This document shows positions 1,904 through 32,597 of a stretch of DNA of 64,000 nucleotides, piece after piece. The DNA comes from Macrostomum lignano (taxonomy: Eukaryota), in assembly GCA_002269645.1 (NCBI GenBank), contig NIVC01000741.1, positions 62,001 through 126,000 on the forward strand, written 5' to 3'. The translations under genes and the position numbers were made by a program. The notes under the pieces are model-generated. The model saw only the letters and a program-made list of their open reading frames with translations, ran no database searches and was not told where the DNA came from. The stretch's first letter is position 1. Each line of letters starts with the position of its first letter.

Positions 1904-4129
1904 GCGGACATTTACTTCATTACTTTAACAGTAAACAGTTTTCCATTTAAATACACAGTTGTGCGAGCATATACGTATAAAACTAATGCTATGTTGATGA
2001 TAAAAATGCCTTTCCACTTCTTATACATGTACGCGTTCAATACCATGACCATTGGTTTTACACAAATGGGGGGGGGGAGATCGGAAACCGGAGATCCTAA
2101 ACCAGGACTTTGTTTTTGCGGCCCTGACGGAGAGCTGAAACTGGTTTAGAGTCTCCTGGGGGGAGATCAGAAACTGGTTTAAGATCTCCGGGTGCGGAGA
2201 CCTGAAAATGCCCCGGAGACCCTTAAACGGTTTCAGATCTCCTACCTCGGAGACCCATAACCGTTAGAAGTCTCCAGGAGAGATCCTAAACGGTTTAGGG
2301 TCTCCGGGCGGAGATCCTAAACCGTTTAGGGTCTCCGCCCCGGACACCCTAAACTGACCGGACCCCCGGAGATCCTAAACCATAACACCGGCCTTGTCCT
2401 TTTATTCAGCTGATTCAGATCCAAGGGCCTCTGACAGTTGCTAAGAGATATGCTATATCTTTTTATTGTATGGTCTGTATTGAAAATTTTAATGTTTGTC
2501 TTAGACTTATTCTACCAAGCTTAGAAGGCCCATCATTATCGTTCCTGAATATACATCATTACATGCATGGACATCCGAGACGGCTTGTTGTCTCTTCCAT
2601 ATCTCATGGCCTTGCATTTTGTAGCGGGAAAATCAATGTATCGACTCAGAACTCTGGAATCAGAATTTAATGTAACTTAATTCGATCATCGCACCGTTTA
2701 AAATATGTTTTTTTATTCGAAAGTTATGACTAAAAATTATAAATATAACATCTGGGGGTTAAGGGGTTTAGTTTGACTAGCTATAGACTTGATCTTTTGC
2801 AACGAGGAATGTAAAATGAGCAGAAGGAGCCAAGGAAAAACAGAAGCATGTATAGAAGAAAATAAAAAAAACAAGAGAGAATGGAAACGTAAGCACCATG
2901 ATATGGTCCAGACAGGATCGAACAACAAATAAAAAACCGATCGCAGTTGCGGAAAGAAATCGTGCTGCGAGAGCAAATCGACTCTAAGAGAGGTAATCTA
3001 CAGGGGAATGTTTTCATTTTCTTTTTCAGTTGCTTAAAATATACTTGGTGGTTTTTCTTCCAAATATTCAACGTCAATATTCTCTACTGCAGTGGAAACT
3101 GGGGAAGCGAGGAAGCAATTAATAAATGTTGTTACGGTAGCCATGTAGCTGTATGACTATATGCTGTCTATGACTATGACTATGTATATATCTCTGGCTT
3201 GAGGTGCGCTTCATCATTGGACGTACAGATGATACTGCATGACACAGCCCAACCGTGATGATCATCCGACCTCTCAAGTAACAATGGCTGATGCAGAGTT
3301 AAAGTGAAGGAATTCAGTGAAGGAATTACAGATGTAGTGATGAATCACCATCAGTAGATGGCGATGGCGGTGCTGTAACAGACTTTATTTATTTAACTCT
3401 CCCCACCTCTTGTTATATTTTAGTCATAGCTTCTAAAGAGATTAACATTTTGAAAGAAGTAAAAAAGTGATAGAACTATAACATTTTTATTTACCCAATT
3501 CAGTTGACGCAAATTGCATTAAATTACATCGATTACTGCTTCTGTTTTGGGACAGCTTTGGTACACTGCAGTACGATCTAGATGGGCTACCGTTTGTTTC
3601 AGTTAAACAAATGTGTCTTTGAAACAAAAGCAATCATGCAGCGATGCTAAAAATTCACTTATACTGTATGAAAACAGTGTGCATACATGCGCAAATGTGA
3701 AATGATTCTGCAGAATATTCGGGTGGTCGCTATCTCTGCCAAAACGGTCACGCGGGGGTCTGCAGCTACCTTTAGTCGACTGCACTGCAGGAGCGCGTTA
3801 TCAATTGATCCCGCTGCCATAAGTCGTCCACCATGAGATCTTAGCAAGCTACTCGAGAGACGCGCTACTCAGTTGAGCTGTACGACGAGTATACGAATAG
3901 CCATGCTAAGAGATTGGCAATCTCAACACACCTGCTTATCACCAGCTTTCAGTTTCATTGGCCTCTTTGCAACTGCGTAAAATCTTCTTGATCTTTTGAA
4001 TTAGGTAGGTTTTTCAGTTTAAAAGAAAGAATTGCTCCTCCAAATATCAAATTTCATAAAAAAACTCTTGGCAGCAGCAGAGATCCGGAGAGATAAGTCG
4101 ATCAAGTCGTCCGAGGATAATTTAAAAAA

Positions 4130-18731: not shown

Positions 18732-21150
18732 GCACCTGGGCTCTGGGAATCAGCGTTTGCATGAACCATCCGACTTGATCATTGATAGCCAGTTGGCATA
18801 GTACTGTACGTGGATGATTGATGGGTCGCTTAATTTCACAAGCTCGAAATTTCACGTTGATCGAAGACCGCTAGTAAACTCCAATTAGCTCGAAACAAAA
18901 ATTCATCACATCATAGAAAACAAAATTTTTTTGTCGATTTCACAAGCTTGAAGCTTAATTCATACATGTACATGCATACGTATAATTGTCGAAAAGTTTA
19001 TTGATTTTTTACCAGCTTCAATTCAGTTTAAGCTTTTGAAATTACAGGGCATGTGAATTTTCGAGCTTGTAGAAGATCCTTATAAACGCCTCACTCCAAT
19101 TAATGGCTAAGCCAAAGAAGGACTGGGCCATACACTTCAAGGTAGGCCTAGTACATGTACGAGTACAATGTTAATCCAGTAGCTAAATTGACTTGGCTTT
19201 GCAATCCAGATCTCTCGAATCAAAGCATGCTACTATACTGCTCATCTGCATGGAAGAGCGCACGAGTAGCTAGATTTATCTTTATTTTCGAAAGCCTTCC
19301 TGAGGCGACACGTGCACAGTATGTACATATGGGGCCGTCGCCATCGTCGCAGGCACGATCATTTTGGTGCCGCAGGCACTCACATTTTGGTACTCAAGCG
19401 CTATACATGTATATACTTTGTCACTCGAATTGCAAAATCATAGATTTCCATAACCGGTCACAATTAATTGGTTAGGTGGGGGACAAAGAATTGGCATTGT
19501 CCCCCCATTAGCTTTTATTGGGAGGGACATGTCCCCCCAGTGGCGACACGCCTGTGTATACATTTACTTGCATACATATCTCTTTTATATGCATATCTCT
19601 ATCTCTGTATGCATATCTTTTGTATGTATATCTCTGCACTGCATATAAAATGGCATGCAACAACAAGGGCAATACGAAAAGACCACGGGACGTTCTGTTG
19701 TCGTGTCATCGCCTTCGTAATGCACCCACACAGCAAATCGCCGAAAACTACATGTAGTTAGCAGCTGGGGCAAGTGTGCAACCATATATATTGAATCACC
19801 TCCTGAGCTATTTGTTTAAATGTGCTGAGGTAACACATTAAGTATTAATAAACGTATGAAACATTCGCCGACACTTATTCAGACACTTCTACAGACACTT
19901 TATTTTCTGTCGTACGGTTAGGAACAAGCATTAAATTTGTCTAGGACACTTCCTAATTCATATTTAATGAAATAAAGCAGTCCATGCATAGTTTTAATTT
20001 TGCAATTTTGTTTTTGTGCACTCGTTCCAGACTTTCAAATTATGGCTTTTATCGCGTAGTGTGCGTGCATGCATCGTGTACAACGATTAGCTGCAGCGTG
20101 CTAAATAGTTCAATTAGGTATTAAAAGCGTACAAGGTATTTGTACAATAGTATTTGTACATTTTAGTTGAAGTTAAAAGTTCAAGCTTTTAGTGAATCAT
20201 TGGAAAATAAAACTATCCGTTTTAAATCGTGCAACATATTGTTTTGTCTCGGACATTTGTGACACTGTCACTTAGGGTTGCAAGGTTTTTTAAAAGAGAA
20301 ACTGTTGCTTTTCCAATGCTGAAGTATTTGTGTTGTATGGATCAGGGTTTTTCGTCAAAATTTGGATGCATGTATACATCTAAACATATAAAAATGATCA
20401 AGGTTGAAGATTACCCTATGGTATAACTGTTTTCTCCATTTTACTATTTCAAAGTGCCCACGTGAAGTTAGATTTAGCATGCCAGCCTTAAAAAATAAAA
20501 AAATCTACATAGTGTAGAATTGTATACTCTTTTATTTAAGACTATATTATATTCCCAATATATTTGCTTAGATAAATCGAAAAGTATTTACTTTACTTGA
20601 AAAAAATAATGTTCACTACAAATATTTCAATGTAGAAACCAGGAAACATAAACCTATCAAGTGTTATATAGAAATGAAGGATAAAGATATGGATAGAATA
20701 TAATAAAGCCATTGTGGGCATTAAATATAAAACAAAAGAATCACTTAAGGCAAAATTTGAAAAAAGTGAATTTTTGGCATGCTCCAAGAAAAGAGGCTTA
20801 TAATTTGAAATATTTTTGCTTTTGTTTGACAAAAAATATGTATAGATTTATACTTTTGGGCAAGGTTTATTTTCTCTTAAAATTCTAATTGTAAATTTGC
20901 CAGTAAGCTTAAAAATTGTTGTAAGTTGAAGCTCAAATAAAATTAGTCTTAACTCCAATCTGACTTTCCAAAGTAAATCCCTAAATTATTTGTTACAATT
21001 GCTTTAAAAACTTGCCATTTCATTTATTCATTAATCAAAATTTTGTTCTAGAAACTGATACCTATAGAAGGTTTTTAGTTTTTAAGAAATCTAGTAACTA
21101 GTGTCAGAGAAATATGTTTATGTAGGTTTTATATATATATATATCAACCT

Positions 21151-21217
21151 TATATATAAAAAAGGTTGCACACTGAGATTTAAATACAGCTTCTAACATG
21201 TGTGTCCAGAGGTGAGA
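21151..21217 (+). promoter_or_regulatory. Inward-facing TATA box (21151-21160) and splice donor CAGAG|GTGAGA (21211/21212) in the left TIR; mirrored at 30804-30816 and 30756/30755 on the - strand
   Basis: TATATATAAAAAAGG followed ~50 nt later by a consensus donor immediately before the satellite. Confidence 0.55.
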
Positions 21218-21222
21218 TTGTG

Positions 21223-22235
21223 GCCAACTGCACACCAATAGCATACCAACTCTATACCAAATCCATACTGACATGCCAACTGTATACCAACTGTATACAA
21301 ACACCATATCAACTCCATACCAACTGCATACCAACCCCATACCAATATGCCAACTGCATACCAACTCCATACCAATATGCCAACTGCATACCAACTCCAT
21401 ACCAACATGCCAACTGCATACCAACTACATACCAACATGCCAACTGCATACCAACACCATACCAACTCCATACCAACTGCATACCAACTGCATACCAACT
21501 CCATACCAACTACATACCAACATGCCAACTGCATACCAACACCATACCAACTCCATACCAACTGCATACCAACTCCATACCAACTATACTCCAACATGCC
21601 AACTGTATACCTACACCATACCAACTGTATGCCAACTGCATACCAACTCCATACCAACATGCCAACTGCATACCAACTCCATACCAACATGCCAACTGCA
21701 TACCAACTACATACCAACATGCCAACTGCATACCAACACCATACCAACTCCATACCAACTGCATACCAACTACATACCAACATGCCAACTGCATACCAAC
21801 ACCATACCAACTGCATGCCAACTGCATACCAACTCCATACCAACATGCCAACTGCATACCAACTCCATACCAACTGCATACCAACTCCATACCAACTCCA
21901 TACCAACATGCCAACTGCATACCAACACCATACCAACTGCATACCAACTGCATACCAACTCCATACCAACATGCCAACTGCATACCAACTCCATACCAAC
22001 TGCATACCAACTGCATACCAACTGCATACCAACTCCATACCAACTATATTCCAACATGCCAACTGTATACCAACACCATACCAACTGTATGCCAACTGCA
22101 TACCAACTGCATACCAACTGCATACCAACTGCATACCAACTCCATACCAACTGTATGCCAACTGCATACCAACTGCATACCAACTGCATACCAACTCCAT
22201 ACCAACATGCCAACTGCATGCCAACTCCATACCAA
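21223..22235. repeat. Satellite of ATACCAAC(TGC/TCC/ACC/ATGCCAACTGC) modules, left TIR
   Basis: Shuffled short CCAAC-core modules; source of the stop-poor spurious ORFs in the track. Confidence 0.95.
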
Positions 22236-22361
22236 GAATGTTAAATTGCGAGACTCGTAGGAACTTTTAGGTTCTCTTTTTGTACAACTCTTGGGATACT
22301 TCTGCCATGTTGCCATCTTTCCTGACTCTTTTGATGACTAAAATCGCACTCTTCCATATGC

Positions 22362-23501
22362 ATGGACCAGTTATTACAAGGCCCACCAGATGCTGTTCTG
22401 CCTTGTGTAGGTGCGGTCCTACCATGCCCTTCTCTTCCTGTCATTGTGACGTTCAACAACAGCGATGAACTATCGATTCAGTCGGTTTGCCAGAGGCTTT
22501 GCGTTTGCACACGTTCATTTAATCATTCTAATATCCGTGTGCGAGACGGATTTCGTAGGTGCGGACGTGATCGAGTGTCTGTTGTCCAATTAATAACCGA
22601 TCCTAGCAAGGTTGCATTTTTGCACGGTGTATATGGTTGTGGAAACAAAGACCACCGTGGTAATGGCATTGCTTGGCTGCAGCGTGTAACTAAGCCACAT
22701 CTGACGCAGTCAGTTGTCCTACGTCGAGAGGTTCCGGGTCACCATTTTCAAAGTTCAAAGCGACTGCGGAAGCAAGTTTTGCAGAGCTTTCGGCTCCTTA
22801 TTTCTTCATGTGATGTGTCTGTTCTTCGTTCTCTGCTCGTTGTCTCGCGCGGCTTCAGTCAGCTACAATCGACTGTGCACCGTCGGCGTTTCATGCAGCG
22901 GCGATCACGCCCAACTGATGAGGAGCAGCGGCAGCACGCGCTGCAAGACGAGCAGCGGCATCTCGAGCTGGATGAACAGCGGCATCCGCAGATACAGGAC
23001 GGCCAACGGCAACTCGCACTGCAGGAGCCGCGGCAGCTCGAGCTGGATGAACAGCGGCATCCGCAGATACAGGACGGCCAACGGCAACTCGCACTGCAGG
23101 AGGAGCCGCGGCAGCTCGAGCTGGATGAACAGCGGCATCCGCAGATACAGGACGGCCAACGGCAACTCGCACTGCAGGAGGAGCCGCGGCAGCTCGAGCT
23201 GGATGAACAGCGGCATCCGCAGATACAGGACGGCCAACGGCAACTCGCATTGCAGGAGGAGCCGCGGCAGCTCGAGCTGGATGAACAGCGGCATCCGCAG
23301 ATACAGGACGGCCAACGGCAACTCGCACTGCCAGAGGAGCAGCGGCAGCTCGAGCTGGATGAACAGCGGCAGTCCCAACAGTACGAGTGTCCCGCTCTTG
23401 GACCACTAAAACCAATGCGTCGGAGATCGCAGAGGCCCCAGAGATCTTTAAGGTCGGTCCAACCAGCGATGTCATTGCGCTCGCGAACGAGGCATGAGTA
23501 A
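22362..23501 (+). CDS. Transposon second ORF, 379 aa, unknown function; ~185-aa unique N-terminus plus 4-5 copies of a 28-29-aa Q/E/R-rich repeat
   Basis: Long open non-repetitive frame starting ~130 nt inside the left TIR; followed by an AT-rich spacer with AATAAA signals. Confidence 0.55.
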   Translation: MDQLLQGPPDAVLPCVGAVLPCPSLPVIVTFNNSDELSIQSVCQRLCVCTRSFNHSNIRVRDGFRRCGRDRVSVVQLITDPSKVAFLHGVYGCGNKDHRGNGIAWLQRVTKPHLTQSVVLRREVPGHHFQSSKRLRKQVLQSFRLLISSCDVSVLRSLLVVSRGFSQLQSTVHRRRFMQRRSRPTDEEQRQHALQDEQRHLELDEQRHPQIQDGQRQLALQEPRQLELDEQRHPQIQDGQRQLALQEEPRQLELDEQRHPQIQDGQRQLALQEEPRQLELDEQRHPQIQDGQRQLALQEEPRQLELDEQRHPQIQDGQRQLALPEEQRQLELDEQRQSQQYECPALGPLKPMRRRSQRPQRSLRSVQPAMSLRSRTRHE

Positions 23502-24343
23502 CAGACTAGGATGATGCGTGACGGAATATCGGATGCGTGTCTGTTCAGTTTGCGAGTTCGTTATGCGAGTTTGCCAGCTTCTTTTGCACGAAAATAAGAA
23601 CGCTGGTATTCGAGCATTAAACAAAGTCATACCGTTCGTATAGCTTATTGGCTTATCTATTGTACCATGCAACAATTTTCATTGCAACAAAGTATGTAGT
23701 TGAATGACTTCAGCGTAGTAGTAACTATGAGACAAGTATCTTATGTGGTTTTTAATCTATACTTCCTTGAACGATTAATTGTAGTTTATACTTATATTTG
23801 AACAGTTTCATTTCCTTTACCCGTATTAGTTGTCAGTCCTTGTGTTGAAATAAATTCTTTCGGATAAATAAAGCAAAGGAATGTTTCATGGCACGTATTT
23901 CGTTGAACAATTTTTTCTTTTGTGACATTTATTGGCCTAAGTGATAAGTGACAGGTGTACAGGTTTCACAGGCCAAAAACAATTACGATTATACTCAAAT
24001 GGAGAGTATTTAGCTGCAAGAAAAGAGTATATAGTTGACACTATAAGTTTTAGAACTCACGTTGTCTAAACGGTTTACTAACGGCGTTTAGTCCCAGCTT
24101 TTAGCGCATACAGAAAAATAGAGAATTAAAATGGCGGTAAACTATAAAATGCAAATCCGTACATGTATATATGTAGACCTTTTCAACACAGTTAAAAGTT
24201 TTTGTTATAAATACATTACACAGCACGATCATCAGTTATGAATTTATACTTTCAACGGCATGAGACCATTACAAACACGAATAAACTCAAGAAAATAAGT
24301 AAACCGTCCACATTATGTTAATAACACGGAGATCACCAGCACG

Positions 24344-25423
24344 TTAGCCGTAAAAAAGAGCGCAGCAGTTTCGCTTCACGTCATTGAATGCCGCTGACAA
24401 AGATACTTTTCGTACAGTCAAATCACTGACACAGTAGCTAGTGCGGCCACAGAATACGTATGCAATATAGTGACCACTATTCACGCGACTACCAATGTGA
24501 ACGATGGCTGCACGAAGCTTGTAGCTTCTGCCACTCAAAGTAAGCTTCATCTCGATGGGTACAACTTTAGTGTTCTTCTCGAATAGTACAGTTTGTCCCT
24601 TTCTGCGCTTGACAGAGACTCGGCTAATTCCCATGCATATGTGCTCCGACGTTGTTGCAAGTGTTTGTGCATAGCTGCACCCCCGACGTCGCAAGTCGGA
24701 CAACGGATGTCGGTGTGGTCTTGAGTAGAAAACAGTGACTGTCTAATGAGTGCCGGGAAATCAAGCGAGTCGTCGTGATCAGGAATTGATAAACGTAGAA
24801 TAGTTGCCGTGTCTCTAGGTAGCAGTCGTGTCACTTTGAAACAGGCGGAACAACTCAAAGTTGTAGAAATCTACGAAATAAAAAAGATGGATAGGAACAG
24901 TACTCATGGTGCAACTGTGAAGACCAACACACAGTGGAAGCGCGATTGAAAGGTATTCTTTGCCTTCCAGCAAAGTATATACTGTCTTCGAAGGTAACTT
25001 ACAAATAAATTTAGATTCAGGATGCAGGCTTAAATCACTTTACTAAAACGCATTTAAATAGTCATAAACTTAATAAACCGTTCACCCTTACCTCGCAGCT
25101 GAATCGCAGTTTGAGCTCAGAAAGAAACAGCATTCCGGTCAGAAACTCTAAGGCACAGTTTTGTGCCATAGGATCCATATGAAATGCTTTACTGCACCAC
25201 TGAAACGCGGCTGAATGCAGCAACAGAACGTCTTTGCCTGTCATTAGGCAGTTAAGGAACAATGCAAGTGGTGAATCTGCATCACACGATAGTGCGCTCG
25301 TTAATGTTGCAACCAAGCATTGACTGGCGGCATTGAAAGCACAATACGTGCCCGTCGGATTCGGTAGCCCCTCTGGCGACCGTGGCGATAGTGCAGGAAA
25401 TGACACTGCAGTGTCGGCGCGTC
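24344..25423 (-). other. USP-family cysteine protease (deubiquitinase-like) domain carried by the transposon
   Basis: Cys box GLPNPTGTYCAFNAASQCL, QNCALEFL, zinc-finger CxxC pairs, His box YKLRAAIVHIG..SGHYIAYV and downstream D; candidate triad residues present. Confidence 0.85.
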
Positions 25424-28400
25424 CTAATAAAATTGGCGGTTAGGAACGAATTTACCATCAAAATGTCCCAGTGAACAGCCCAGTCACATCCATTTAACAA
25501 CAAAAAATGGCGCCTCGACGTAAGCAAAAGAAACGAAACTTAAAAGTACAAATACTTATGGAAAGCAACATGTTGAATGCTAATTCATGGAAATTAGTAA
25601 AACTTAAAAGGGCATAATCGGTGACACGAAAAGCAAAAAAATGATAGAATCATAAACTTTAGATCTCTAATCAGAGAACAATCACGTAACAGAGACGTGC
25701 ATCATACGGAACATGTTGGATTGTGCAATATAAATACCTGTGCCAGTCGAGACGGAGGAGGCCTACAAAGAGAGTTGATTGATAAGGTTGCACCTTACCC
25801 ACAAGTTGCTGAGACATGGCACATACATTACTACGACAGATCTAGTGGGAGACGCAAATTGTGGCGGAGTGAGTGTACGGCGCATACACAATACGTAAAC
25901 CAATACAAGGGTTGACTGAAGGTATTTCTAAACTGAAAAAATGCAATTTCATCACTCACAATTTGCTCATCTGGTAGGCTGTGACAGGTGGTATTCTGTG
26001 CTGTTGGTGCAGGTGAAATGCCCGAGCGAGACCCACTTGCAGCAGGCGCAGCTAGTGTACAGGTCGTGGGTGCAATAGCAGGCCGAACCTGGACAATGAC
26101 GGGCTGGCTGCCCCAGCGAGACCCACTTGCAGCAGGCGCAGCTAGTGTACAGGTCGTGGGTGCAATAGCAGGCCGAACCTGGACAATGACGGGCTGGCTG
26201 CCCCAGCGAGACCCACTTGCAGCAGGCGCAGCTAGAGTACAGGTCGTGGGTGCAATAGCAGGCCGAACCTGGACAATGACGGGCTGGCTGCCCGAGCGAG
26301 ACCCACTTGCAGCAGGCGCAGCTAGAGTACAGGTCGTGGGTGCAATAGCAGGCCGAACCTGGACAATGACGGGCTGGCTGCCCAAGCGAGACCCACTTGC
26401 AGCAGGCGCAGCTAGAGTACAGGTCGTGGGTGCAACGGCTGGCGGAATTGATAATGCCGATTGAATGAAGCTGGTTCTTCGTCTTTTTGAGGCTCCTGAC
26501 CTTTTCCAGGGATCTCCAGGTGGGTTTAACGGAGCATCAAAGCCACATTTGCGTCCTCTAGCACGCTTTGGGGGGCGAATTGGATGTTGCTCGTGCTGCA
26601 ACCGCTTCAGTTGCAGTTTTACGGTTGTTAGTTGCGCACGGACAAATCTTGGTAACCTGAGCCGAGAACTTGGAGAAGGCAGTGCTTCGCTTTTGCACCA
26701 GCTGAACCATGATTCAACAGCGGCGTTGGTCACGTGTGCGCTACGATTTCCTCCAAACACTGCCACACTCCAAAGAGGAAACAGTGGCATCCACTTTCGC
26801 AATACAACCTGAACAGCCTGAGGGTAGAAAAGATTGTTCAGCACGCCATTGCCATCGCTTGCTGTCACTTCGCTTGTCAAATCGTTGAAGTACTTCGCAA
26901 AAGGTGATGAGGCTCGTAGTCCAGTCTCCAATTCAGCCAATGCGACGTCTTCTTGCACTGCATTTGAGACATTAGCAGAATCTTCAGCCACTTGGTTTTC
27001 ATCAGGAATCTCCAACGAACTGAAGTCGAACCTACCATGTAGAATTTGTAAAGCCTTCAAAGTGGCAGGATTTACCCGCCTGGAGGTAAACACCTCGACC
27101 ATTGCCTTCCAAACAGCTTGGGCGCAACGCAAAGTTTTCGACGTCACTAATAGTGCAAAAGAGAGCATGAACTCGCGATAAGTAACCTTATCGATTTTAT
27201 CTGGTGACTTCAAAGTCCTGGCAACAGCGCGCAGCAAATGCGAGCTACAGATAAACACAACAGGAGATTCAGGTGGCTTCAGATCAGCACTCCGAAGTCG
27301 ATTGTACTGTACACGCAGGTAGTCTGTAACACAGGTCGTGCATGCGGCTCGGAGAATACCATGAATGAAAACCCAGCTAAAGTCAGACACGTAGATTTGC
27401 GGACCTTTCTTGGGTAGTTCCCACAGTCCTATGTTGCAGTGACGAGCGAAATCTGCTAAAAAATGCATTAGCCAACTGGACACATTTTCCGAGCGCGTGA
27501 CCTCCATGATGCTTTCTGATACAGCTGTTCTCTTTATATCCGGGGTTGCAACAACAGCACTGCACAGAAGTACAGTGCTCGGCACGTTCTGGGTCTGTCG
27601 CACAATTCCGCCGGTGGCGTCTAAGTGGAGAGGAGCAAGCTGATTGCCTTTCAGCACGTCGCGAAGCAAATCCAACTGCATGGAGGTATGGAGAATCACA
27701 CTAACTGGTGCAACGTCAATCTTTTGGATATAGCCGCTAATGACTCCATCCTCGTTTATAGTCAACTTCCAGTCTTTCATTTGGAGTCTTAAATCTCTTA
27801 TGTCGTCTGGAGACTTGTCGTCGGCAGCTTTTGTCCGACTAACAGTTGTACGGACAGCAGATAGAGAGCATGCTTCGCTACCAAACAGCTCGATTGCTTT
27901 CACATAGATCTGCGTTGGCTTGGCAGCAGGGTTGGTGGCCTGAGATAAAACAAAGTTACGGCACTCTTGTGAACCTCGTTGCAACAGATAGCGATAAGAG
28001 GAACAACTTGATGGAACATCATGCCCCGAGTGCTCTGAGATTCTTCGTAGCGTCAGTGTAGAGGACTGCCCATCAGTCGGCGCCTTGTTTAAGGTGACGA
28101 CGAATGCCATACTGCAACCAGAGCCTTCGGCACAGACTAGGCGCATCCAAAGAAAACTGCAGTCCTTCCTATGGCGCTTAAATGCACGCAGTCTAACCTT
28201 ATTCACTGAGAACTGACAATACTCACCATGCTGTCTTAACAGTGGATAAATGACTTGATCCAACCAAGAAGGCTTAAGTTTACAAGTTCTTGTATCAAAG
28301 TGATTCACGAAGAGATTAGTTGATATGCATGATTCCACAAAAAAACCTCCAGCAGAAAAAACTTGTGCACCAGCAGCACCTGAATGGTCACCGCTAATGG

Positions 28401-28437
28401 CTTCAGAAGTGTCGTTCACACTTTTCTTCGCTGCCAT
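24344..28437 (-). CDS. NOF-like MULE transposase with spliced C-terminal USP (peptidase C19) domain, ~1120 aa; exons 28437-25960, 25762-25738, 25423-25092, 24870-24344 (one base short, probably in the C-run 24680-24684)
   Basis: LHLDATGG (D1), YVSDFSW (D2), ICSSHL (CxxH), TNAAVESWF (E); then GLPNPTGTYCAFNA, CSAC..CPTC, HIGSRVNSGHYIAYV, VSD. GT-AG introns with matching phases 0,1,0. Confidence 0.8.
26010..26450 (-). repeat. 90-bp coding tandem repeat (APAASGSRxGSQPVIVQVRPAIAPTTCTLA, ~4.7 copies) in the transposase-USP linker
   Basis: In-frame repeat visible in ORF 25831..28437. Confidence 0.9.
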
Positions 28438-28513
28438 GCAAAGAAGCCTGAAACATGAAACAATGGTATGAATTTGCCATGTTTTCGTTTAGTGTGGCAT
28501 AATATAAGTTGTC

Positions 28514-30744
28514 ATGTTGGTATGTAGTTAGTATGTTGGTATGGAGTTGGTATGCAGTTGGCATGTTGGTATGGAGTTGGTATGCAGTTGGCATGTTGGT
28601 ATGGAGTTGGTATGCAGTTGGCATGTTGGTATGGAGTTGGTATGCAGTTGGCATACAGTTGGTATGGTGTAGGTATACAGTTGGCATGTTGGAATATAGT
28701 TGGTATGGAGTTGGTATGCAGTTGGTATGCAGTTGGTATGGAGTTGGTATGGTGTTGGTATGCAGTTGGCATGTTGGTATGTAGTTGGTATGGAGTTGGT
28801 ATGCAGTTGGTATGCAGTTGGTATGGAGTTGGTATGGTGTTGGTATGCAGTTGGCATGTTGGTATGTAGTTGGTATGCAGTTGGCATGTTGGTATGGAGT
28901 TGGTATGCAGTTGGCATACAGTTGGTATGGTGTAGGTATACAGTTGGCATGTTGGAGTATAGTTGGTATGGAGTTGGTATGCAGTTGGTATGGAGTTGGT
29001 ATGGTGTTGGTATGCAGTTGGCATGTTGGTATGTAGTTGGTATGGAGTTGGTATGCAGTTGGTATGGAGTTGGTATGGTGTTGGTATGCAGTTGGCATGT
29101 TGGTATGTAGTTGGTATGCAGTTGGCATGTTGGTATGGAGTTGGTATGCAGTTGGTATGGTGTTGGTATGCAGTTGGCATGTTGGTATGTAGTTGGTATG
29201 GAGTTGGTATGGTGTTGGTATGCAGTTGGCATGTTGGTATGTAGTTGGTATGCAGTTGGTATGTAGTTGGTATGCAGTTGGCATGTTGGTATGGAGTTGG
29301 TATGCAGTTGGCATGTTGGTATGGAGTTGGTATGCAGTTGGCATGTTGGTATGGAGTTGGTATGCAGTTGGCATACAGTTGGTATGGTGTAGGTATACAG
29401 TTGGCATGTTGGAGTATAGTTGGTATGGAGTTGGTATGCAGTTGGTATGGAGTTGGTATGGTGTTGGTATGCAGTTGGCATGTTGGTATGTAGTTGGTAT
29501 GGAGTTGGTATGCAGTTGGTATGCAGTTGGTATGGAGTTGGTATGCAGTTGGTATGGAGTTGGTATGCAGTTGGCATGTTGGTATGGAGTTGGTATGCAG
29601 TTGGTATGGAGTTGGTATGGTGTTGGTATGCAGTTGGCATGTTGGTATGTAGTTGGTATGCAGTTGGTATGGAGTTGGTATGCAGTTGGCATGTTGGTAT
29701 GGAGTTGGTATGCAGTTGGTATGGAGTTGGTATGCAGTTGGCATGTTGGTATGGAGTTGGTATGCAGTTGGCATACAGTTGGTATGGTGTAGGTATACAG
29801 TTGGCATGTTGGAGTATAGTTGGTATGGAGTTGGTATGCAGTTGGTATGGAGTTGGTATGGTGTTGGTATGCAGTTGGCATGTTGGTATGTAGTTGGTAT
29901 AGAGTTGGTATGCAGTTGGTATGCAGTTGGTATGGAGTTGGTATGGTGTTGGTATGCAGTTGGCATGTTGGTATGTAGTTGGTATGCAGTTGGCATGTTG
30001 GTATGGAGTTGGTATGCAGTTGGCATGTTGGTATGGAGTTGGTATGCAGTTGGCATACAGTTGGTATGGTGTAGGTATACAGTTGGCATGTTGGAGTATA
30101 GTTGGTATGGAGTTGGTATGCAGTTGGTATGGAGTTGGTATGGTGTTGGTATGCAGTTGGCATGTTGGTATGTAGTTGGTATAGAGTTGGTATGCAGTTG
30201 GTATGCAGTTGGTATGGAGTTGGTATGGTGTTGGTATGCAGTTGGCATGTTGGTATGTAGTTGGTATGCAGTTGGCATGTTGGTATGGAGTTGGTATGCA
30301 GTTGGCATGTTGGTATGGAGTTGGTATGCAGTTGGCATACAGTTGGTATGGTGTAGGTATACAGTTGGCATGTTGGAGTATAGTTGGTATGGAGTTGGTA
30401 TGCAGTTGGTATGGAGTTGGTATGGTGTTGGTATGCAGTTGGCATGTTGGTATGTAGTTGGTATGGAGTTGGTATGCAGTTGGTATGCAGTTGGTATGGA
30501 GTTGGTATGGTGTTGGTATGCAGTTGGCATGTTGGTATGTAGTTGGTATGCAGTTGGCATGTTGGTATGGAGTTGGTATGCAGTTGGCATATTGGTATGG
30601 AGTTGGTATGCAGTTGGCATATTGGTATGGGGTTGGTATGCAGTTGGTATGGAGTTGATATGGTGTTTGTATACAGTTGGTATACAGTTGGCATGTCAGT
30701 ATGGATTTGGTATAGAGTTGGTATGCTATTGGTGTGCAGTTGGC
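28514..30744. repeat. Satellite (GTTGGTATG modules) of the right TIR, ~2.2 kb, with a 282-bp higher-order repeat
   Basis: Reverse complement of the left satellite; identical track ORFs 29921..30175 and 30203..30457 are offset by 282 bp. Confidence 0.95.
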
Positions 30745-32112
30745 CACAATCTCACCTCTGGACACACATGTTAGAAGCTGTATTTAAATCTCAGTGTGCA
30801 ACCTTTTTTATATATAAGGTTGATATATATATATAAAACCTACATAAACATATTTCTCTGACACTAGTTACTAGATTTCTTAAAAACTAAAAACCTTCTA
30901 TAGGTATCAGTTTCTAGAACAAAATTTTGATTAATGAATAAATGAAATGGCAAGTTTTTAAAGCAATTGTAACAAATAATTTAGGGATTTACTTTGGAAA
31001 GTCAGATTGGAGTTAAGACTAATTTTATTTGAGCTTCAACTTACAACAATTTTTAAGCTTACTGGCAAATTTACAATTAGAATTTTAAGAGAAAATAAAC
31101 CTTGCCCAAAAGTATAAATCTATACATATTTTTTGTCAAACAAAAGCAAAAATATTTCAAATTATAAGCCTCTTTTCTTGGAGCATGCCAAAAATTCACT
31201 TTTTTCAAATTTTGCCTTAAGTGATTCTTTTGTTTTATATTTAATGCCCACAATGGCTTTATTATATTCTATCCATATCTTTATCCTTCATTTCTATATA
31301 ACACTTGATAGGTTTATGTTTCCTGGTTTCTACATTGAAATATTTGTAGTGAACATTATTTTTTTCAAGTAAAGTAAATACTTTTCGATTTATCTAAGCA
31401 AATATATTGGGAATATAATATAGTCTTAAATAAAAGAGTATACAATTCTACACTATGTAGATTTTTTTATTTTTTAAGGCTGGCATGCTAAATCTAACTT
31501 CACGTGGGCACTTTGAAATAGTAAAATGGAGAAAACAGTTATACCATAGGGTAATCTTCAACCTTGATCATTTTTATATGTTTAGATGTATACATGCATC
31601 CAAATTTTGACGAAAAACCCTGATCCATACAACACAAATACTTCAGCATTGGAAAAGCAACAGTTTCTCTTTTAAAAAACCTTGCAACCCTAAGTGACAG
31701 TGTCACAAATGTCCGAGACAAAACAATATGTTGCACGATTTAAAACGGATAGTTTTATTTTCCAATGATTCACTAAAAGCTTGAACTTTTAACTTCAACT
31801 AAAATGTACAAATACTATTGTACAAATACCTTGTACGCTTTTAATACCTAATTGAACTATTTAGCACGCTGCAGCTAATCGTTGTACACGATGCATGCAC
31901 GCACACTACGCGATAAAAGCCATAATTTGAAAGTCTGGAACGAGTGCACAAAAACAAAATTGCAAAATTAAAACTATGCATGGACTGCTTTATTTCATTA
32001 AATATGAATTAGGAAGTGTCCTAGACAAATTTAATGCTTGTTCCTAACCGTACGACAGAAAATAAAGTGTCTGTAGAAGTGTCTGAATAAGTGTCGGCGA
32101 ATGTTTCATACG
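28514..32112 (-). repeat. Right TIR: satellite plus ~1.37 kb unique arm
   Basis: Inverted copy of 19853-22235. Confidence 0.93.
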
Positions 32113-32597
32113 TATTAATAAAAAGGTTGTGCTACTGTTTTCGTCGGTACAAATTGTGAAAAACGGTAGATTTTGGGGCTGGAGGGAAATTATGAGTCTT
32201 TTAACCTTTTGACTACAGCTCTGTCTGTCAAAATCACTAGCTAGCCAGGCCTATTTTTCGTTAACTAAAAATTGCATTCTCTTTCTAAGAAAGGTTTGAA
32301 ATGCAAAGTTTCACGATCACGTTCGAACTGTGTTGATGTTGTGACGTTGTGTGGTGTCGTGGTGTTACGTGGTGACGTGGTGTGTGGTTGCAGTCTACTT
32401 TGTTCCCACGCCCAGTAAGTACTTCTTACTATCACTACTTTCTGTCTGTCTGTAGTGCTGATTTAAAAATTGAATTTAAGAATGAAGTAATAAAGCTTAA
32501 AAAGTCTGTCTCGTGGACTGTGACTCAGTGACTGATTTTCTCGAAATTCGAAATTCAAAGTTGTTAGTAAGCAAGCTTGTGTTTTTAGGCTGATTGA

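What the first reader, a model, noticed from the sequence alone, without database searches (positions are those of the whole stretch)
19843..32122. 12.3-kb Foldback/NOF-like Mutator whose transposase is spliced to a USP-type deubiquitinase domain
Seen: 10-bp TSD, near-identical multi-kb TIRs, MULE D-D-CxxH-E motifs, and three phase-compatible GT-AG introns linking the transposase to a domain with USP Cys box, zinc fingers and His/Asp box. Known: some MULEs carry Ulp1 (C48) or OTU proteases, and Drosophila FB-NOF pairs modular TIRs with a ~120-kDa protein. Inference: this is an autonomous element encoding a ~1120-aa transposase-DUB fusion that could protect the transpososome from ubiquitin-dependent turnover or remove chromatin ubiquitin marks (anti-silencing). 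I do not know of a described C19/USP fusion, but cannot exclude that NOF-like proteins already have it.
Basis: partly seen in the sequence, partly recalled or inferred. Interest (0 to 1): 0.9.

Follow-up and report, generated by a model that had tools for sequence, protein, structure and literature searches.

The report
Flatworm Rehavkus transposon carrying a deubiquitinase
This is a recently active 12.3-kb "foldback"-type DNA transposon (Rehavkus group, a distant ally of Mutator) in the flatworm Macrostomum lignano; its transposase gene is followed by exons for a ubiquitin-specific protease, but in this copy a one-base deletion breaks that protease.

Summary
The element is real. It spans window 19852-32113, with 2.4-kb and 3.6-kb terminal inverted repeats (TIRs). 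The outer ~1.9 kb of the TIRs is identical; the inner parts are arrays of an 11-nt repeat. The window is M. lignano contig NIVC01000741.1. Five more copies (99.3-99.97% identical) sit at other loci with their own target duplications. These copies show the true termini are ACGTATG...CATACGT and the TSD is 8 bp (9 in one copy), not 10.

The 868-aa ORF is a Rehavkus-type transposase: 105.9 bits (E 2.5e-32) to published Rehavkus cores, no Pfam MULE hit, and D273/D352/C397xxH400/E575.

The downstream exons encode a genuine USP/C19 domain (Pfam UCH 38 bits) with Cys box, QxxxxEF, two CxxC pairs, and His and Asp boxes.

A G5 run (G6 in four of six copies) frameshifts the last exon between the Cys and His boxes. 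Sister copies L001 and L007 are intact.

The splice link is unproven. The annotated model joins 25960 to 25423 out of frame; a 25-nt micro-exon or in-frame donors in the coding repeats would restore the frame. Distant relatives carry transposase plus USP in one uninterrupted ORF. A paralogous M. lignano family carries Ulp1 in the same position.

Verdict: a new variant of a known kind, of moderate interest.

The parts
19844..19851 (.). Left target site duplication, ATTAATAA (8 bp)
Evidence: With the termini ACGTATG...CATACGT defined from five copies, the duplicated flank is 8 bp.
19852..22235 (.). Left TIR (3' TIR in gene orientation). Unique outer part 19852-~21220; inner array of about 96 copies of an 11-nt unit (CCAACTCCATA) at 21224-22235.
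   Evidence: I1 1291 nt 100%, I2 653 nt 100%; TRF.
22362..23501 (+). Convergent 379-aa ORF of unknown function. It spans a 78-nt x 5.7 minisatellite (22929-23371).
   Evidence: No significant Pfam hit. The equivalent ORF is annotated as a gene (299-377 aa, opposite strand to the transposase) in copies L006, L007 and L008. A minisatellite before the 3' TIR is a described Rehavkus feature (PMC6446971).
24344..24870 (-). USP exon 4. Contains zinc-ribbon CSAC (24841-24852) and CPTC (24691-24702), the frameshift site (G5 run at 24680-24684), the His box YKLRAAIVHIGSRVNSGHYIAYV (24455-24523), the Asp box CVSDLTV (24413-24433), and the stop codon at 24344-24346.
   Evidence: frames. (L001 has G6 at exactly this site). 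(G6 in 4 of 6 copies; exon 4 is open in those four). (Pfam UCH).
24871..25091 (-). Intron 3 (GTAAGG...TTTCGTAG), 221 nt
   Evidence: The Pfam UCH alignment runs across the exon 3/4 junction (residues 81-293 of the 294-aa query), and the motif order ...QNCALEF...RFSCE|ISTTLSCSAC... is that of USP domains.
25092..25423 (-). USP exon 3. Contains the Cys box GLPNPTGTYCAFNAASQ (25320-25370, catalytic Cys codon 25341-25343) and QNCALEF (25143-25163). The USP frame opens only at 25439, and there is no in-frame ATG before the Cys box.
   Evidence: The acceptor at 25424/25423 is used by both database models, P0001 and P0002.
25738..25762 (-). It converts phase 0 to phase 1 and so puts the USP in frame.
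   Evidence: It is the best-scoring AG...GT candidate of length 1 mod 3 in the intron (donor 7/9, polypyrimidine fraction 0.7). It is not used in P0001 or P0002, so it is unverified.
25960..28437 (-). Transposase exon 1 (826 codons to the annotated donor ATT|GTGAGT; the unspliced ORF runs on to the stop at 25831, giving 868 aa). Contains an N-terminal Cys/His-rich region (about aa 74-139), the catalytic residues D273 (27607-27630), D352 (27373-27393), C397xxH400 (27238-27249) and E575 (26704-26727), the basic GDPWKR tail motif (26500-26517), and a coding 90-nt x 4.6 repeat (26019-26435) that holds five in-frame phase-1 donors CAA|GTGGGT.
   Evidence: (632 homologues at E<=1e-3). (Rehavkus HMM 105.9 bits). 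(donors). (TRF).
28516..32113 (.). Right TIR (5' TIR in gene orientation). Inner array of about 213 copies of the 11-nt unit at 28516-30743; unique outer part to 32113.
32114..32121 (.). Right target site duplication, ATTAATAA

Best explanation
Window 19852-32113 is one copy of a young, low-copy Rehavkus-type cut-and-paste DNA transposon of Macrostomum lignano. Rehavkus is a foldback-like group allied to Mutator.

The element's single long gene, on the minus strand, encodes a DDE/RNase-H-type transposase with the D-D-CxxH-E signature. A variable linker built from 30-aa tandem repeats follows. After one or two introns come two exons encoding a complete USP (peptidase C19) deubiquitinase.

In the family's intact copies (L001, L007) the USP can be joined in frame to the transposase, giving a protein of about 1090-1120 aa. 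That domain order (transposase, basic tail, linker, USP) is the architecture seen as single ORFs in distant relatives. The window's copy has an intact transposase ORF, but its USP is split by a 1-nt deletion in a G-run. It can therefore make only the transposase and a truncated USP that keeps the Cys box. It may still be mobilised using protein from the intact copies.

Inferred mechanism (not shown): the transposase binds the reiterated 11-nt subterminal repeats and cuts at the ACGTATG termini, making 8-9-bp staggered target cuts. The tethered USP removes ubiquitin either from the transposase or transpososome itself (protection from proteasomal turnover or extraction) or from chromatin and repair factors at the donor and target sites. 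A Ulp1 deSUMOylase occupies the same C-terminal position in a paralogous M. lignano family, and Ulp1 in other relatives; an OTU domain also occurs in one relative. This points to a general need of these transposases to erase ubiquitin-like modifications.
For: Mobility and youth:
- Six copies on six contigs, 99.3-99.97% identical internally, each complete copy flanked by its own 8-9-bp duplication.
- TIR outer parts are 100% identical.

Family:
- phmmer against published Rehavkus cores gives E 1.5e-16 (Rehavkus-3_TC), 7.9e-15 (-1_TC) and 1.1e-10 (-1_HR).
- The Rehavkus HMM scores 105.9 bits on the element and hits 149 of the 152 proteins tested.
- The structural hallmarks in the literature match: long TIRs with subterminal tandem repeats, a minisatellite before the 3' TIR, and a 9-bp TSD.

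USP:
- Pfam UCH 38.1 bits against a cutoff of 23.9.
- Cys box, QxxxxEF, two CxxC pairs, and GHY and Asp boxes are all present.
- Exon 4 is open in 4 of 6 copies, and the whole fusion is open in L001 and L007.
- There is no in-frame ATG upstream of the catalytic Cys in its exon, so the domain must be spliced onto upstream coding sequence.

Fusion architecture in relatives:
- P0037 (Mercenaria mercenaria XP_053374366.1) has the transposase core at 74-461 and Pfam UCH at 645-842.
- P0086, P0139 and P0142 have C-terminal tails that hit USP15/USP4/USP14 as a profile (E 9e-7), and P0086 translates as one uninterrupted ORF on its contig.
- Nine relatives have a canonical NxCWLNSxLQ Cys box 50-150 aa after the transposase core.

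Module swapping:
- Peptidase_C48 is found in 7-8 of 51 relatives and OTU in 1.
- The 40%-identical M. lignano paralogue family has Ulp1 exons downstream of its transposase (Pfam 31.4 bits).
Against: - The cis-splice that would fuse the USP to the transposase is not demonstrated. The only NCBI model (P0001) joins 25960 to 25423 in the wrong phase and stops 40 codons later without the USP.
- The micro-exon has no support from either database model, nor from the paralogue.
- This particular copy cannot make an active USP.
- The element's USP is not detectably similar to the relatives' USP tails (phmmer E>0.3; hhalign probability 6%). The modules may therefore have been acquired independently rather than inherited.
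- AlphaFold without an alignment gave an unusable model (pLDDT 34), so there is no fold-level confirmation.
- No PHD finger, listed as a Rehavkus hallmark, is detectable in this protein.
- All functional statements about the USP are inference.
Confidence: 0.72

Rival explanations
1. There are two products rather than a fusion. The transposase (868 aa unspliced, or about 866 aa with the annotated splice and an out-of-frame tail) is the only protein made from the long ORF. The USP is a separate accessory protein of the element. It would be translated from its own short first exon (ATG at 25817 plus donor TGG|GTAAGG at 25799, giving MSQQLV-GRADT...) or from an SL-trans-spliced downstream cistron.
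For: - P0001's junction leaves the USP out of frame.
- The same thing happens at the Ulp1 exon of the paralogue's model P0153.
- An ATG at 25817, only 14 nt after the stop codon of the 868-aa ORF, with a 6/9 donor in phase 1, gives a 292-aa open USP ORF on L001.
- From my own knowledge, not tested here: M. lignano uses spliced-leader trans-splicing and operons.
Against: - Relatives from other phyla carry the transposase and USP in one polypeptide or one uninterrupted ORF.
- Several in-frame cis donors exist, and one is used in a UniProt model (P0002).
- No promoter or SL evidence is available.
Confidence: 0.18
2. The USP exons are a captured or decaying host-gene fragment (Pack-MULE-like passenger) with no role in the element. 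The transposase alone is the functional product.
For: - The USP is frameshifted in 2 of 6 copies, including this one.
- L006 also has a T->M change beside the Cys box.
- The annotated transcript model does not translate it.
- The domain is very divergent from cellular USPs (no PDB hit by phmmer).
Against: - All five USP signature motifs and the catalytic Cys/His/Asp are intact in the G6 copies.
- A protease module (USP or Ulp1) recurs at the same C-terminal position of Rehavkus transposases in molluscs, flatworms and unnamed metazoan samples, including single-ORF fusions. A random passenger would not be expected to show that.
- Transposase ORFs are broken just as often (L008, L009) as USP exons, as expected for neutral post-insertion decay.
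Confidence: 0.07
3. The G5 'frameshift' in the window copy is an assembly error in a long-read homopolymer, and this copy really encodes the intact fusion.
For: - The difference is a single base in a 5-6-nt G run.
- From my own knowledge, not tested here: the Mlig_3_7 assembly is PacBio-based, and homopolymer indels are the typical residual error.
- The rest of the 6.3-kb internal region differs from L001 by only one synonymous substitution.
Against: A second copy (L006), which differs from the window copy at about 20 other positions, shows the same G5. That could reflect shared descent of a real mutation. No reads are available to decide.
Confidence: 0.35

Closest known systems
Rehavkus DNA transposons (Repbase: Rehavkus-1_TC, -3_TC, -1_HR, -2_NVi, -1_DY, Rehavkus1_AP; grouped with MULE by Yuan & Wessler 2011)
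   Same: - The transposase core is homologous (HMM 105.9 bits).
- Shared motifs: (L/I)xxDATGS, DFS(W/F)A, CxAH, SPF, P(L/M)W(S/T), TNxxVE.
- Long TIRs with subterminal tandem repeats, a minisatellite before the 3' TIR, large size (5-18 kb), and an 8-9-bp TSD.
   Different: - The host is a flatworm. The literature lists only insects and an annelid; my search also finds a bivalve member.
- No PHD finger is detectable in this protein.
- The TSD is mostly 8 bp rather than 9.
- A USP domain is not mentioned for Rehavkus in any paper I could search.
Drosophila Foldback FB4/NOF
   Same: Foldback-type architecture: very long TIRs built largely of short tandem repeats, a large internal ORF, and a TSD of about 9 bp. 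This rests on my own knowledge of FB-NOF. From memory, RepeatMasker labels Rehavkus-type entries DNA/MULE-NOF.
   Different: No NOF sequence was available, so homology was not tested. I do not know whether NOF has a USP domain.
Protease-carrying DNA transposons: Ulp1/C48 in plant MULEs (KI-MULEs, CUMULE) and Ginger1; OTU in Ginger1 and Helitrons/Helentrons; VTD deubiquitinases in Helentrons; Peptidase C19 plus an IS5-type transposase in Trichomonas vaginalis XP_001314237.1
   Same: A cysteine isopeptidase for ubiquitin or SUMO is encoded by, and often fused C-terminally to, the transposition protein. The same functional speculation applies: protection from degradation, DNA-repair modulation, or anti-silencing (PMC2836005; PMC9741609).
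   Different: Here the protease is a C19/USP and the transposase is Rehavkus-type. Within this one clade USP, Ulp1 and OTU modules occur, and USP and Ulp1 occupy the same C-terminal position, even between two families in the same genome.
Cellular USP deubiquitinases (e.g. USP15, USP4, USP14, USP2)
   Same: Pfam UCH family. The Cys box, QxDxxEF-like motif, zinc-ribbon CxxC pairs, His box GHY and catalytic Asp are in canonical order. The relatives' tails align to USP15.
   Different: - Very divergent: phmmer against PDB finds nothing.
- One extra residue in the Cys box (NPTGTYC versus NxGNTC).
- Minimal size (about 285 aa).
- Located inside a transposon and lacking its own start codon.

Membership tests
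Rehavkus (MULE sensu lato) | Transposase core homologous to Repbase Rehavkus transposases | tested here: met
   Six cores were taken from the published alignment (PMC6446971 supplementary file 2). phmmer gives E 1.5e-16, 7.9e-15 and 1.1e-10. The HMM scores 105.9 bits, E 2.5e-32.
Rehavkus (MULE sensu lato) | [quoted passage not shown] | tested here: met
   The TIR arms are 2.4 kb and 3.6 kb, with 11-nt arrays of about 96 and about 213 units.
Rehavkus (MULE sensu lato) | Minisatellite before the 3' TIR | tested here: met
   A 78-nt x 5.7 array at 22929-23371 lies between the gene's stop codon and the 3' (left) TIR. The feature is described.
Rehavkus (MULE sensu lato) | 9-bp target site duplication | tested here: inconclusive
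   The TSD is 8 bp in four copies and 9 bp in one. That is close to, but not the same as, the 9 bp tabulated for Rehavkus.
Rehavkus (MULE sensu lato) | PHD finger in the transposase protein | tested here: not met
   No PHD hit in the 868-aa ORF or the fusion, even at E<=10. PHD is present in only 9-12 of 51 relatives, so it is not universal in the clade.
Canonical Mutator/MuDR (MULE sensu stricto) | Match to the Pfam MULE/Mutator transposase models or to MuDR cores | tested here: not met
   No Pfam MULE-family hit for the element or any of 51 relatives at E<=10. An HMM built from five MuDR cores reaches at most 14.5 bits on the clade, and the element is not among its top hits.
Canonical Mutator/MuDR (MULE sensu stricto) | D...D...CxxH...E catalytic signature | tested here: met
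   D273, D352, C397xxH400 and E575 fall on invariant or nearly invariant alignment columns. From my own knowledge, this signature is shared with hAT, P, Kolobok and other superfamilies, so it is not diagnostic by itself.
Foldback FB-NOF | Homology of the internal protein to Drosophila NOF | not testable with these tools
Literature searches gave no usable sequence or statement.
USP / peptidase C19 (Pfam PF00443 UCH) | Score above the Pfam gathering threshold | tested here: met
   38.1 bits against 23.9 on the exon 3+4 product as encoded by L001. The window's own His-box ORF alone scores 30.6 bits.
USP / peptidase C19 (Pfam PF00443 UCH) | Catalytic Cys (Cys box), His (His box) and Asp/Asn in one reading frame | tested here: not met
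   All three residues are present, but in the window copy the Cys box and the His/Asp boxes lie in different frames because of the G5 run at 24680-24684. The feature is met in copies L001, L007, L008 and L009.
USP / peptidase C19 (Pfam PF00443 UCH) | USP fold (fingers-palm-thumb) | tested here: inconclusive
   The single-sequence AlphaFold2 model had pLDDT 34.1, so no fold search was attempted.
USP / peptidase C19 (Pfam PF00443 UCH) | Deubiquitinating activity | not testable with these tools
   This needs a Ub-AMC or Ub-probe assay.

The most novel reading that the evidence does not exclude
Rehavkus-type transposases may depend, as a rule, on a cis-linked ubiquitin-like-modifier isopeptidase. 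USP, Ulp1 and OTU modules would have been swapped repeatedly at the same C-terminal position. In M. lignano, production of the protease-bearing isoform may be controlled by a frame-switching splice choice. The phase-0 donor would give transposase only; a 25-nt micro-exon or the phase-1 donors reiterated in the coding minisatellite would give the transposase-USP fusion. That would be an isoform switch comparable to P-element transposase versus repressor. The switch might be tunable through the copy number of the 90-nt repeat, which ranges from 3 to 9 units among copies.
Probability: 0.15. Interest if true: 0.8.

Novelty: new variant of a known kind. Interest (0 to 1): 0.55.

Why it matters
Cysteine isopeptidases (Ulp1, OTU, VTD) keep turning up in unrelated eukaryotic transposons and DNA viruses, and nobody has shown what they do for transposition. 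This element offers a tractable case for four reasons:

- It belongs to a young family with at least two fully intact copies.
- Its host, M. lignano, supports transgenesis and has germline and regeneration biology.
- Natural USP-defective copies exist (this one and L006).
- A sister family in the same genome has Ulp1 in place of the USP.

That combination makes the question "why do transposases carry deubiquitinases or deSUMOylases?" directly testable.

The work also extends Rehavkus, so far described only from Repbase entries of insects and an annelid, to flatworms and molluscs. It shows that USP (C19) is one of the clade's recurrent accessory domains.

For genome annotation, it flags that the M. 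lignano models for both families enter the protease exon out of frame.

Tried and rejected
- Pfam on the 868-aa ORF and on 51 relatives found no transposase family at all. Classification therefore had to come from published Rehavkus cores.
- The word-indexed protein search with the whole fusion and with the USP alone returned only the element's own M. lignano proteins.
- phmmer of the USP against PDB gave no hit.
- Single-sequence AlphaFold2 of the USP gave pLDDT 34, which is unusable, so no Foldseek search was run.
- phmmer and hhalign of the element's USP against the relatives' USP tails found no significant similarity beyond the His box. I cannot say whether the modules share ancestry.
- The commonest tail type in relatives (W-GG...NTC(P/T)xDN, 15 members) looked like a Cys box. 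It gave no PDB hit and no significant hhalign match to the verified USP tails, so I did not count it as USP.
- tblastn of the USP against the paralogue locus L003 found nothing. Three-frame reading then showed that the locus carries Ulp1 instead.
- A short intron across the frameshift site was considered. It was rejected because the sister copies restore the frame with a single extra G.
- Yuan & Wessler 2011 could not be retrieved.
- No literature link between NOF and Rehavkus was found.

Full report
**Source and copies**

The window is Macrostomum lignano. The 868-aa ORF is 100% identical to NCBI protein PAA77430.1/PAA89770.1 (BOX15_Mlig004567g1; P0001). Locus L002, fetched through that protein, is the window itself: NIVC01000741.1 of assembly GCA_002269645.1, 100% identical over 22.7 kb.

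The 90%-identity cluster of P0001 holds five proteins from six loci. I fetched all of them: L001, L006, L007, L008 and L009, on five other contigs. Their internal regions are 99.3-99.97% identical to the window. Similarity to the window starts exactly at the element's ends, and the flanking DNA is unrelated. So this is a low-copy family that has transposed recently.

**Ends, TIRs and TSD**

Arms 19852-21142 / 30823-32113 are 100% complementary over 1291 nt. After a 2-nt offset a further 653 nt are 100% complementary. Further in, both arms become arrays of an 11-nt unit (CCAACTCCATA). There are about 96 units on the left (21224-22235) and about 213 on the right (28516-30743), with 63- and 74-nt higher-order periods.

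A 10-bp direct repeat TATTAATAAA does flank the arms. In all five copies with readable ends, however, the base before CGTATG is A and the base after CATACG is T. The termini are therefore 5'-ACGTATG...CATACGT-3'. The duplicated target is ATTAATAA (8 bp) here. It is CTTCAGAA, GCGACTTT and TTATTTTC (8 bp) in L006, L007 and L008, and GTACACTGT (9 bp) in L001.

**The transposase**

The ORF at 28437..25831 (minus strand, 868 aa) has no Pfam hit. An exhaustive HMMER scan of 1.84 billion representative proteins with its first 640 residues found 632 homologues at E<=1e-3 and 201 at E<=1e-10.

An alignment of 51 long homologues has invariant G, D, C, H, N, N and E columns and a nearly invariant first D. 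The consensus motifs are LYLDATGS, DFSWA, CxAH and TNAxVENWF. In the window protein the corresponding residues are D273, D352, C397-x-x-H400 and E575.

No relative hits any Pfam Mutator/MULE model, even at E<=10. The MULE review of Dupeyron et al. (PMC6446971) uses "Rehavkus" as the outgroup to MULEs. It describes Rehavkus as having a 9-bp TSD, long TIRs, a PHD finger and a minisatellite before the 3' TIR. A Tribolium study describes Rehavkus as foldback transposons with long TIRs and variable subterminal tandem repeats.

The review's supplementary alignment contains six Rehavkus cores. Against the window transposase, phmmer gives E 1.5e-16 (Rehavkus-3_TC), 7.9e-15 (-1_TC) and 1.1e-10 (-1_HR). 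An HMM built from the six scores 105.9 bits (E 2.5e-32) and hits 149 of the 152 proteins tested. As a control, an HMM built from five canonical MuDR cores of the same alignment reaches at most 14.5 bits on the clade, and the element is not among its top hits.

The element is therefore a Rehavkus-type element: Mutator-allied, foldback-like, but not canonical Mutator. The 78-nt x 5.7 minisatellite at 22929-23371 lies just before the 3' (left) TIR in gene orientation, which matches the published hallmark. No PHD finger is detectable in this protein. PHD occurs in only 9-12 of 51 relatives. Homology to Drosophila NOF could not be tested.

**The USP domain**

Downstream of the transposase ORF on the same strand, exon 3 (25423-25092) encodes GLPNPTGTYCAFNAASQ (Cys box) and QNCALEF. 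Exon 4 (24870-24344) encodes CSAC and CPTC (zinc ribbon), YKLRAAIVHIGSRVNSGHYIAYV (His box) and CVSDLTV (Asp box).

The His-box ORF alone hits Pfam UCH at 30.6 bits. The joined exon 3+4 product hits it at 38.1 bits (E 1.7e-9; gathering cutoff 23.9), with the alignment running across the exon 3/4 junction. The intron between them (25091-24871) is GT-AG and phase 0. The USP call is solid at the sequence level.

Fold-level confirmation failed. phmmer against PDB found nothing, and a single-sequence AlphaFold2 model was unusable (pLDDT 34).

It reaches a stop at codon 1053, before the His box. The His/Asp boxes lie in frame +2.

The internal 6.3 kb of L001 differs from the window at only two positions. 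One is a synonymous G/T at 28204. The other is one extra G in the run at window 24680-24684, exactly between CPTC and the His box. With G6 the frame is continuous (…CPTCDVGGCSYAQTL…).

Across the six copies the run is G6 in L001, L007, L008 and L009, and G5 in the window and L006. Exon by exon:

| Copy | Transposase exon 1 | USP exon 3 | USP exon 4 |
|---|---|---|---|
| L001 | intact | intact | intact |
| L007 | intact | intact | intact |
| Window (L002) | intact | intact | frameshifted (G5) |
| L006 | intact | intact, with a T->M change beside the Cys box | frameshifted (G5) |
| L008 | frameshifted, first stop at aa 637 | intact | intact |
| L009 | multiple stops | one stop | intact |

So the family encodes the domain intact, and this copy does not. 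It cannot be excluded that G5 is a long-read homopolymer error.

**Is the USP fused to the transposase?**

The USP frame of exon 3 opens only at 25439, and there is no ATG before the catalytic Cys. The domain must therefore be joined to upstream coding sequence.

The NCBI model P0001 joins the strong donor ATT|GTGAGT (exon end 25960, phase 0) directly to the acceptor at 25424/25423. That reads exon 3 in the wrong frame and stops after 40 codons (…PDEQI-DAPTLQCHF…LQH*). The model also lacks 270 nt (three 90-nt repeat units). I take that to reflect a collapsed de novo transcript mapped to the genome; this is my inference.

The UniProt model A0A1I8HZW9 (P0002) instead uses a phase-1 donor CAA|GTGGGT inside a 90-nt repeat unit and the same acceptor. 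It reads …AAPAA-RRADTAVSFPAL…GTYC… in the USP frame. Such a donor occurs once per repeat unit, at five positions, each scoring 7/9 against the consensus, the same score as the annotated donor.

An alternative donor 4 nt downstream (exon end 25956) would also work.

On L001, three models give uninterrupted transposase-USP ORFs: the micro-exon (1120 aa), the 25956 donor (1113 aa) and the repeat donor (1086 aa). Only the annotated junction does not.

A stand-alone USP is also formally possible: ATG at 25817, donor at 25799, giving a 292-aa ORF.

The model of the paralogous family (P0153, L003) also enters its protease exon out of frame: the donor is in phase 2 and phase 0 is needed. Again a skipped exon of length 1 mod 3 would repair it. 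That locus has only a weak 16-nt candidate. Either short exons were lost when transcripts were mapped, or the default isoform is transposase-only. RNA reads are needed to decide.

**Comparative evidence for the fusion architecture**

Among the 150 best transposase homologues:

- P0037 (Mercenaria mercenaria XP_053374366.1) has its transposase core at 74-461 and a Pfam UCH domain above threshold at 645-842.
- P0048 has a Cys-box UCH hit.
- Nine proteins have a canonical G-x-x-N-x-x-N-x-C-W-L-N-S-x-L-Q box 50-150 residues after the core.
- P0086, P0139 and P0142 have C-terminal tails with STCGFDS…CxxC…CxxC…GHYIGY…W…DDL. As a profile these hit USP15, USP4, USP14 and USP2 in the PDB (best E 9e-7). 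P0086 translates as one uninterrupted 1063-aa ORF on its contig.

So transposase-USP single polypeptides exist in this clade. The USP modules of different lineages are too divergent to align with each other or with the window's. Common ancestry versus repeated capture therefore stays open.

A further 15 relatives share an unassigned tail (W-GG…NTC(P/T)xDN…). I could not link it to USPs.

**Module swapping**

In the same set of relatives Pfam finds Peptidase_C48 (Ulp1) in 7-8, OTU in 1, YqaJ/alkaline exonuclease in 2-3, and PHD in 9-12.

The closest paralogue family is also from M. lignano: P0003/P0153, 40% identical in the transposase, with the same layout of transposase followed by a coding tandem-repeat linker. 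It has Ulp1 exons (HFMLLFVD…DPL and QQDGNSCG) downstream of its transposase (Pfam 31.4 bits against a cutoff of 20.7) and no USP. Two sister families in one genome thus carry a deubiquitinase and a deSUMOylase in the same position.

**What is known**

Ulp1 in plant MULEs, Ulp1 and OTU in Ginger1, and OTU in Helitrons are established. The Ginger paper also notes a Peptidase C19 fused to an IS5-type transposase in Trichomonas, and proposes that the ubiquitin and SUMO pathways are broadly involved in transposition (PMC2836005). VTD deubiquitinases in Helentrons were shown to be active enzymes, with protection from proteasomal degradation proposed as their role (PMC9741609).

I found no paper that mentions a USP/UCH/C19 domain in Mutator-like or Rehavkus elements. 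Repbase Reports are not searchable here, so prior description there cannot be excluded.

**Mechanism**

Shown:
- The element's structure.
- Its recent mobility.
- The transposase family and catalytic signature.
- The presence and integrity status of the USP in each copy.
- The fusion architecture in relatives.

Inferred:
- The transposase recognises the reiterated 11-nt subterminal repeats and makes 8-9-bp staggered target cuts.
- The USP travels with the transposase, in cis in the intact copies.
- The USP removes ubiquitin from the transposase or transpososome, or from chromatin and repair factors at the transposition site.

The apparent interchangeability of USP and Ulp1 at this position, and the frequent PHD finger, favour a chromatin- or complex-directed "eraser" role. 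This has not been tested.

**Verdict**

The family is Rehavkus. The fusion is plausible and has precedent in relatives, but it is unproven here and is broken in this copy. This is a new variant of a known kind (protease-carrying DNA transposons) and is moderately interesting.

Noticed in passing
window 22362-23501 (+): A convergent 379-aa ORF inside the element overlaps a 78-nt x 5.7 minisatellite (22929-23371). It has no significant Pfam hit, but the equivalent ORF is annotated as a gene (299-377 aa) in three other copies (L006 15019-16152, L007 15292-16425, L008 14930-16063). It could be a second element gene or an ORF created by the GC-rich repeat.
   Followed up: partly
window 25960/25423 and L003 13150/14652: The NCBI gene models of two different M. 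lignano Rehavkus families both splice into their protease exon (USP and Ulp1 respectively) out of frame. In both cases a skipped exon of length 1 mod 3 would repair the frame. This may be a micro-exon mapping artefact or a real transposase-only default isoform.
   Followed up: partly
L003 14648-16174 (NIVC01001607.1): The paralogous M. lignano Rehavkus family (transposase 40% identical) carries Ulp1/C48 exons (Pfam 31.4 bits) and a PHD-like CWMCG...H motif where this element has a USP. That element (67-nt TIR match at 3453-3519 / 21836-21902, about 18.4 kb) also contains a nested mariner-type transposase gene (L003 6499-7266).
   Followed up: partly
window 26019-26435 (-), and the equivalent region in the other copies: The linker between the transposase and the USP is a coding 90-nt (30-aa) tandem repeat. 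Its copy number varies from 3 to 9 among the six copies, always in frame. Each unit carries a potential phase-1 splice donor (CAA|GTGGGT) that would put the USP in frame.
   Followed up: partly
relatives P0032, P0038, P0042, P0045, P0049, P0052, P0056, P0066, P0068, P0069, P0074, P0075, P0113, P0123, P0125 (alignment A3): Fifteen Rehavkus-type proteins share an unassigned tail domain of about 140 aa (W-GG...NTC(P/T)xDN...W...GSE...CSxxxCP) after the transposase. It has no Pfam or PDB match and no significant profile match to the USP tails. It could be a very divergent or truncated thiol protease, or something else.
   Followed up: partly
window ~32598 onward (+): The annotated 5' end of an FGGY-family carbohydrate kinase gene (Pfam FGGY_N/FGGY_C) lies about 485 bp from the element's right end. 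The element is therefore inserted just upstream of a host gene.
   Followed up: no
relatives in alignment A1: Two or three Rehavkus-type proteins also carry a YqaJ-like or viral alkaline exonuclease domain, another accessory module for DNA-end processing in this clade.
   Followed up: no
L006 (NIVC01000031.1), exon 3: Copy L006 has a Thr-to-Met change three residues before the catalytic Cys (NPMGTYC) in addition to the G5 frameshift it shares with the window copy.
   Followed up: no
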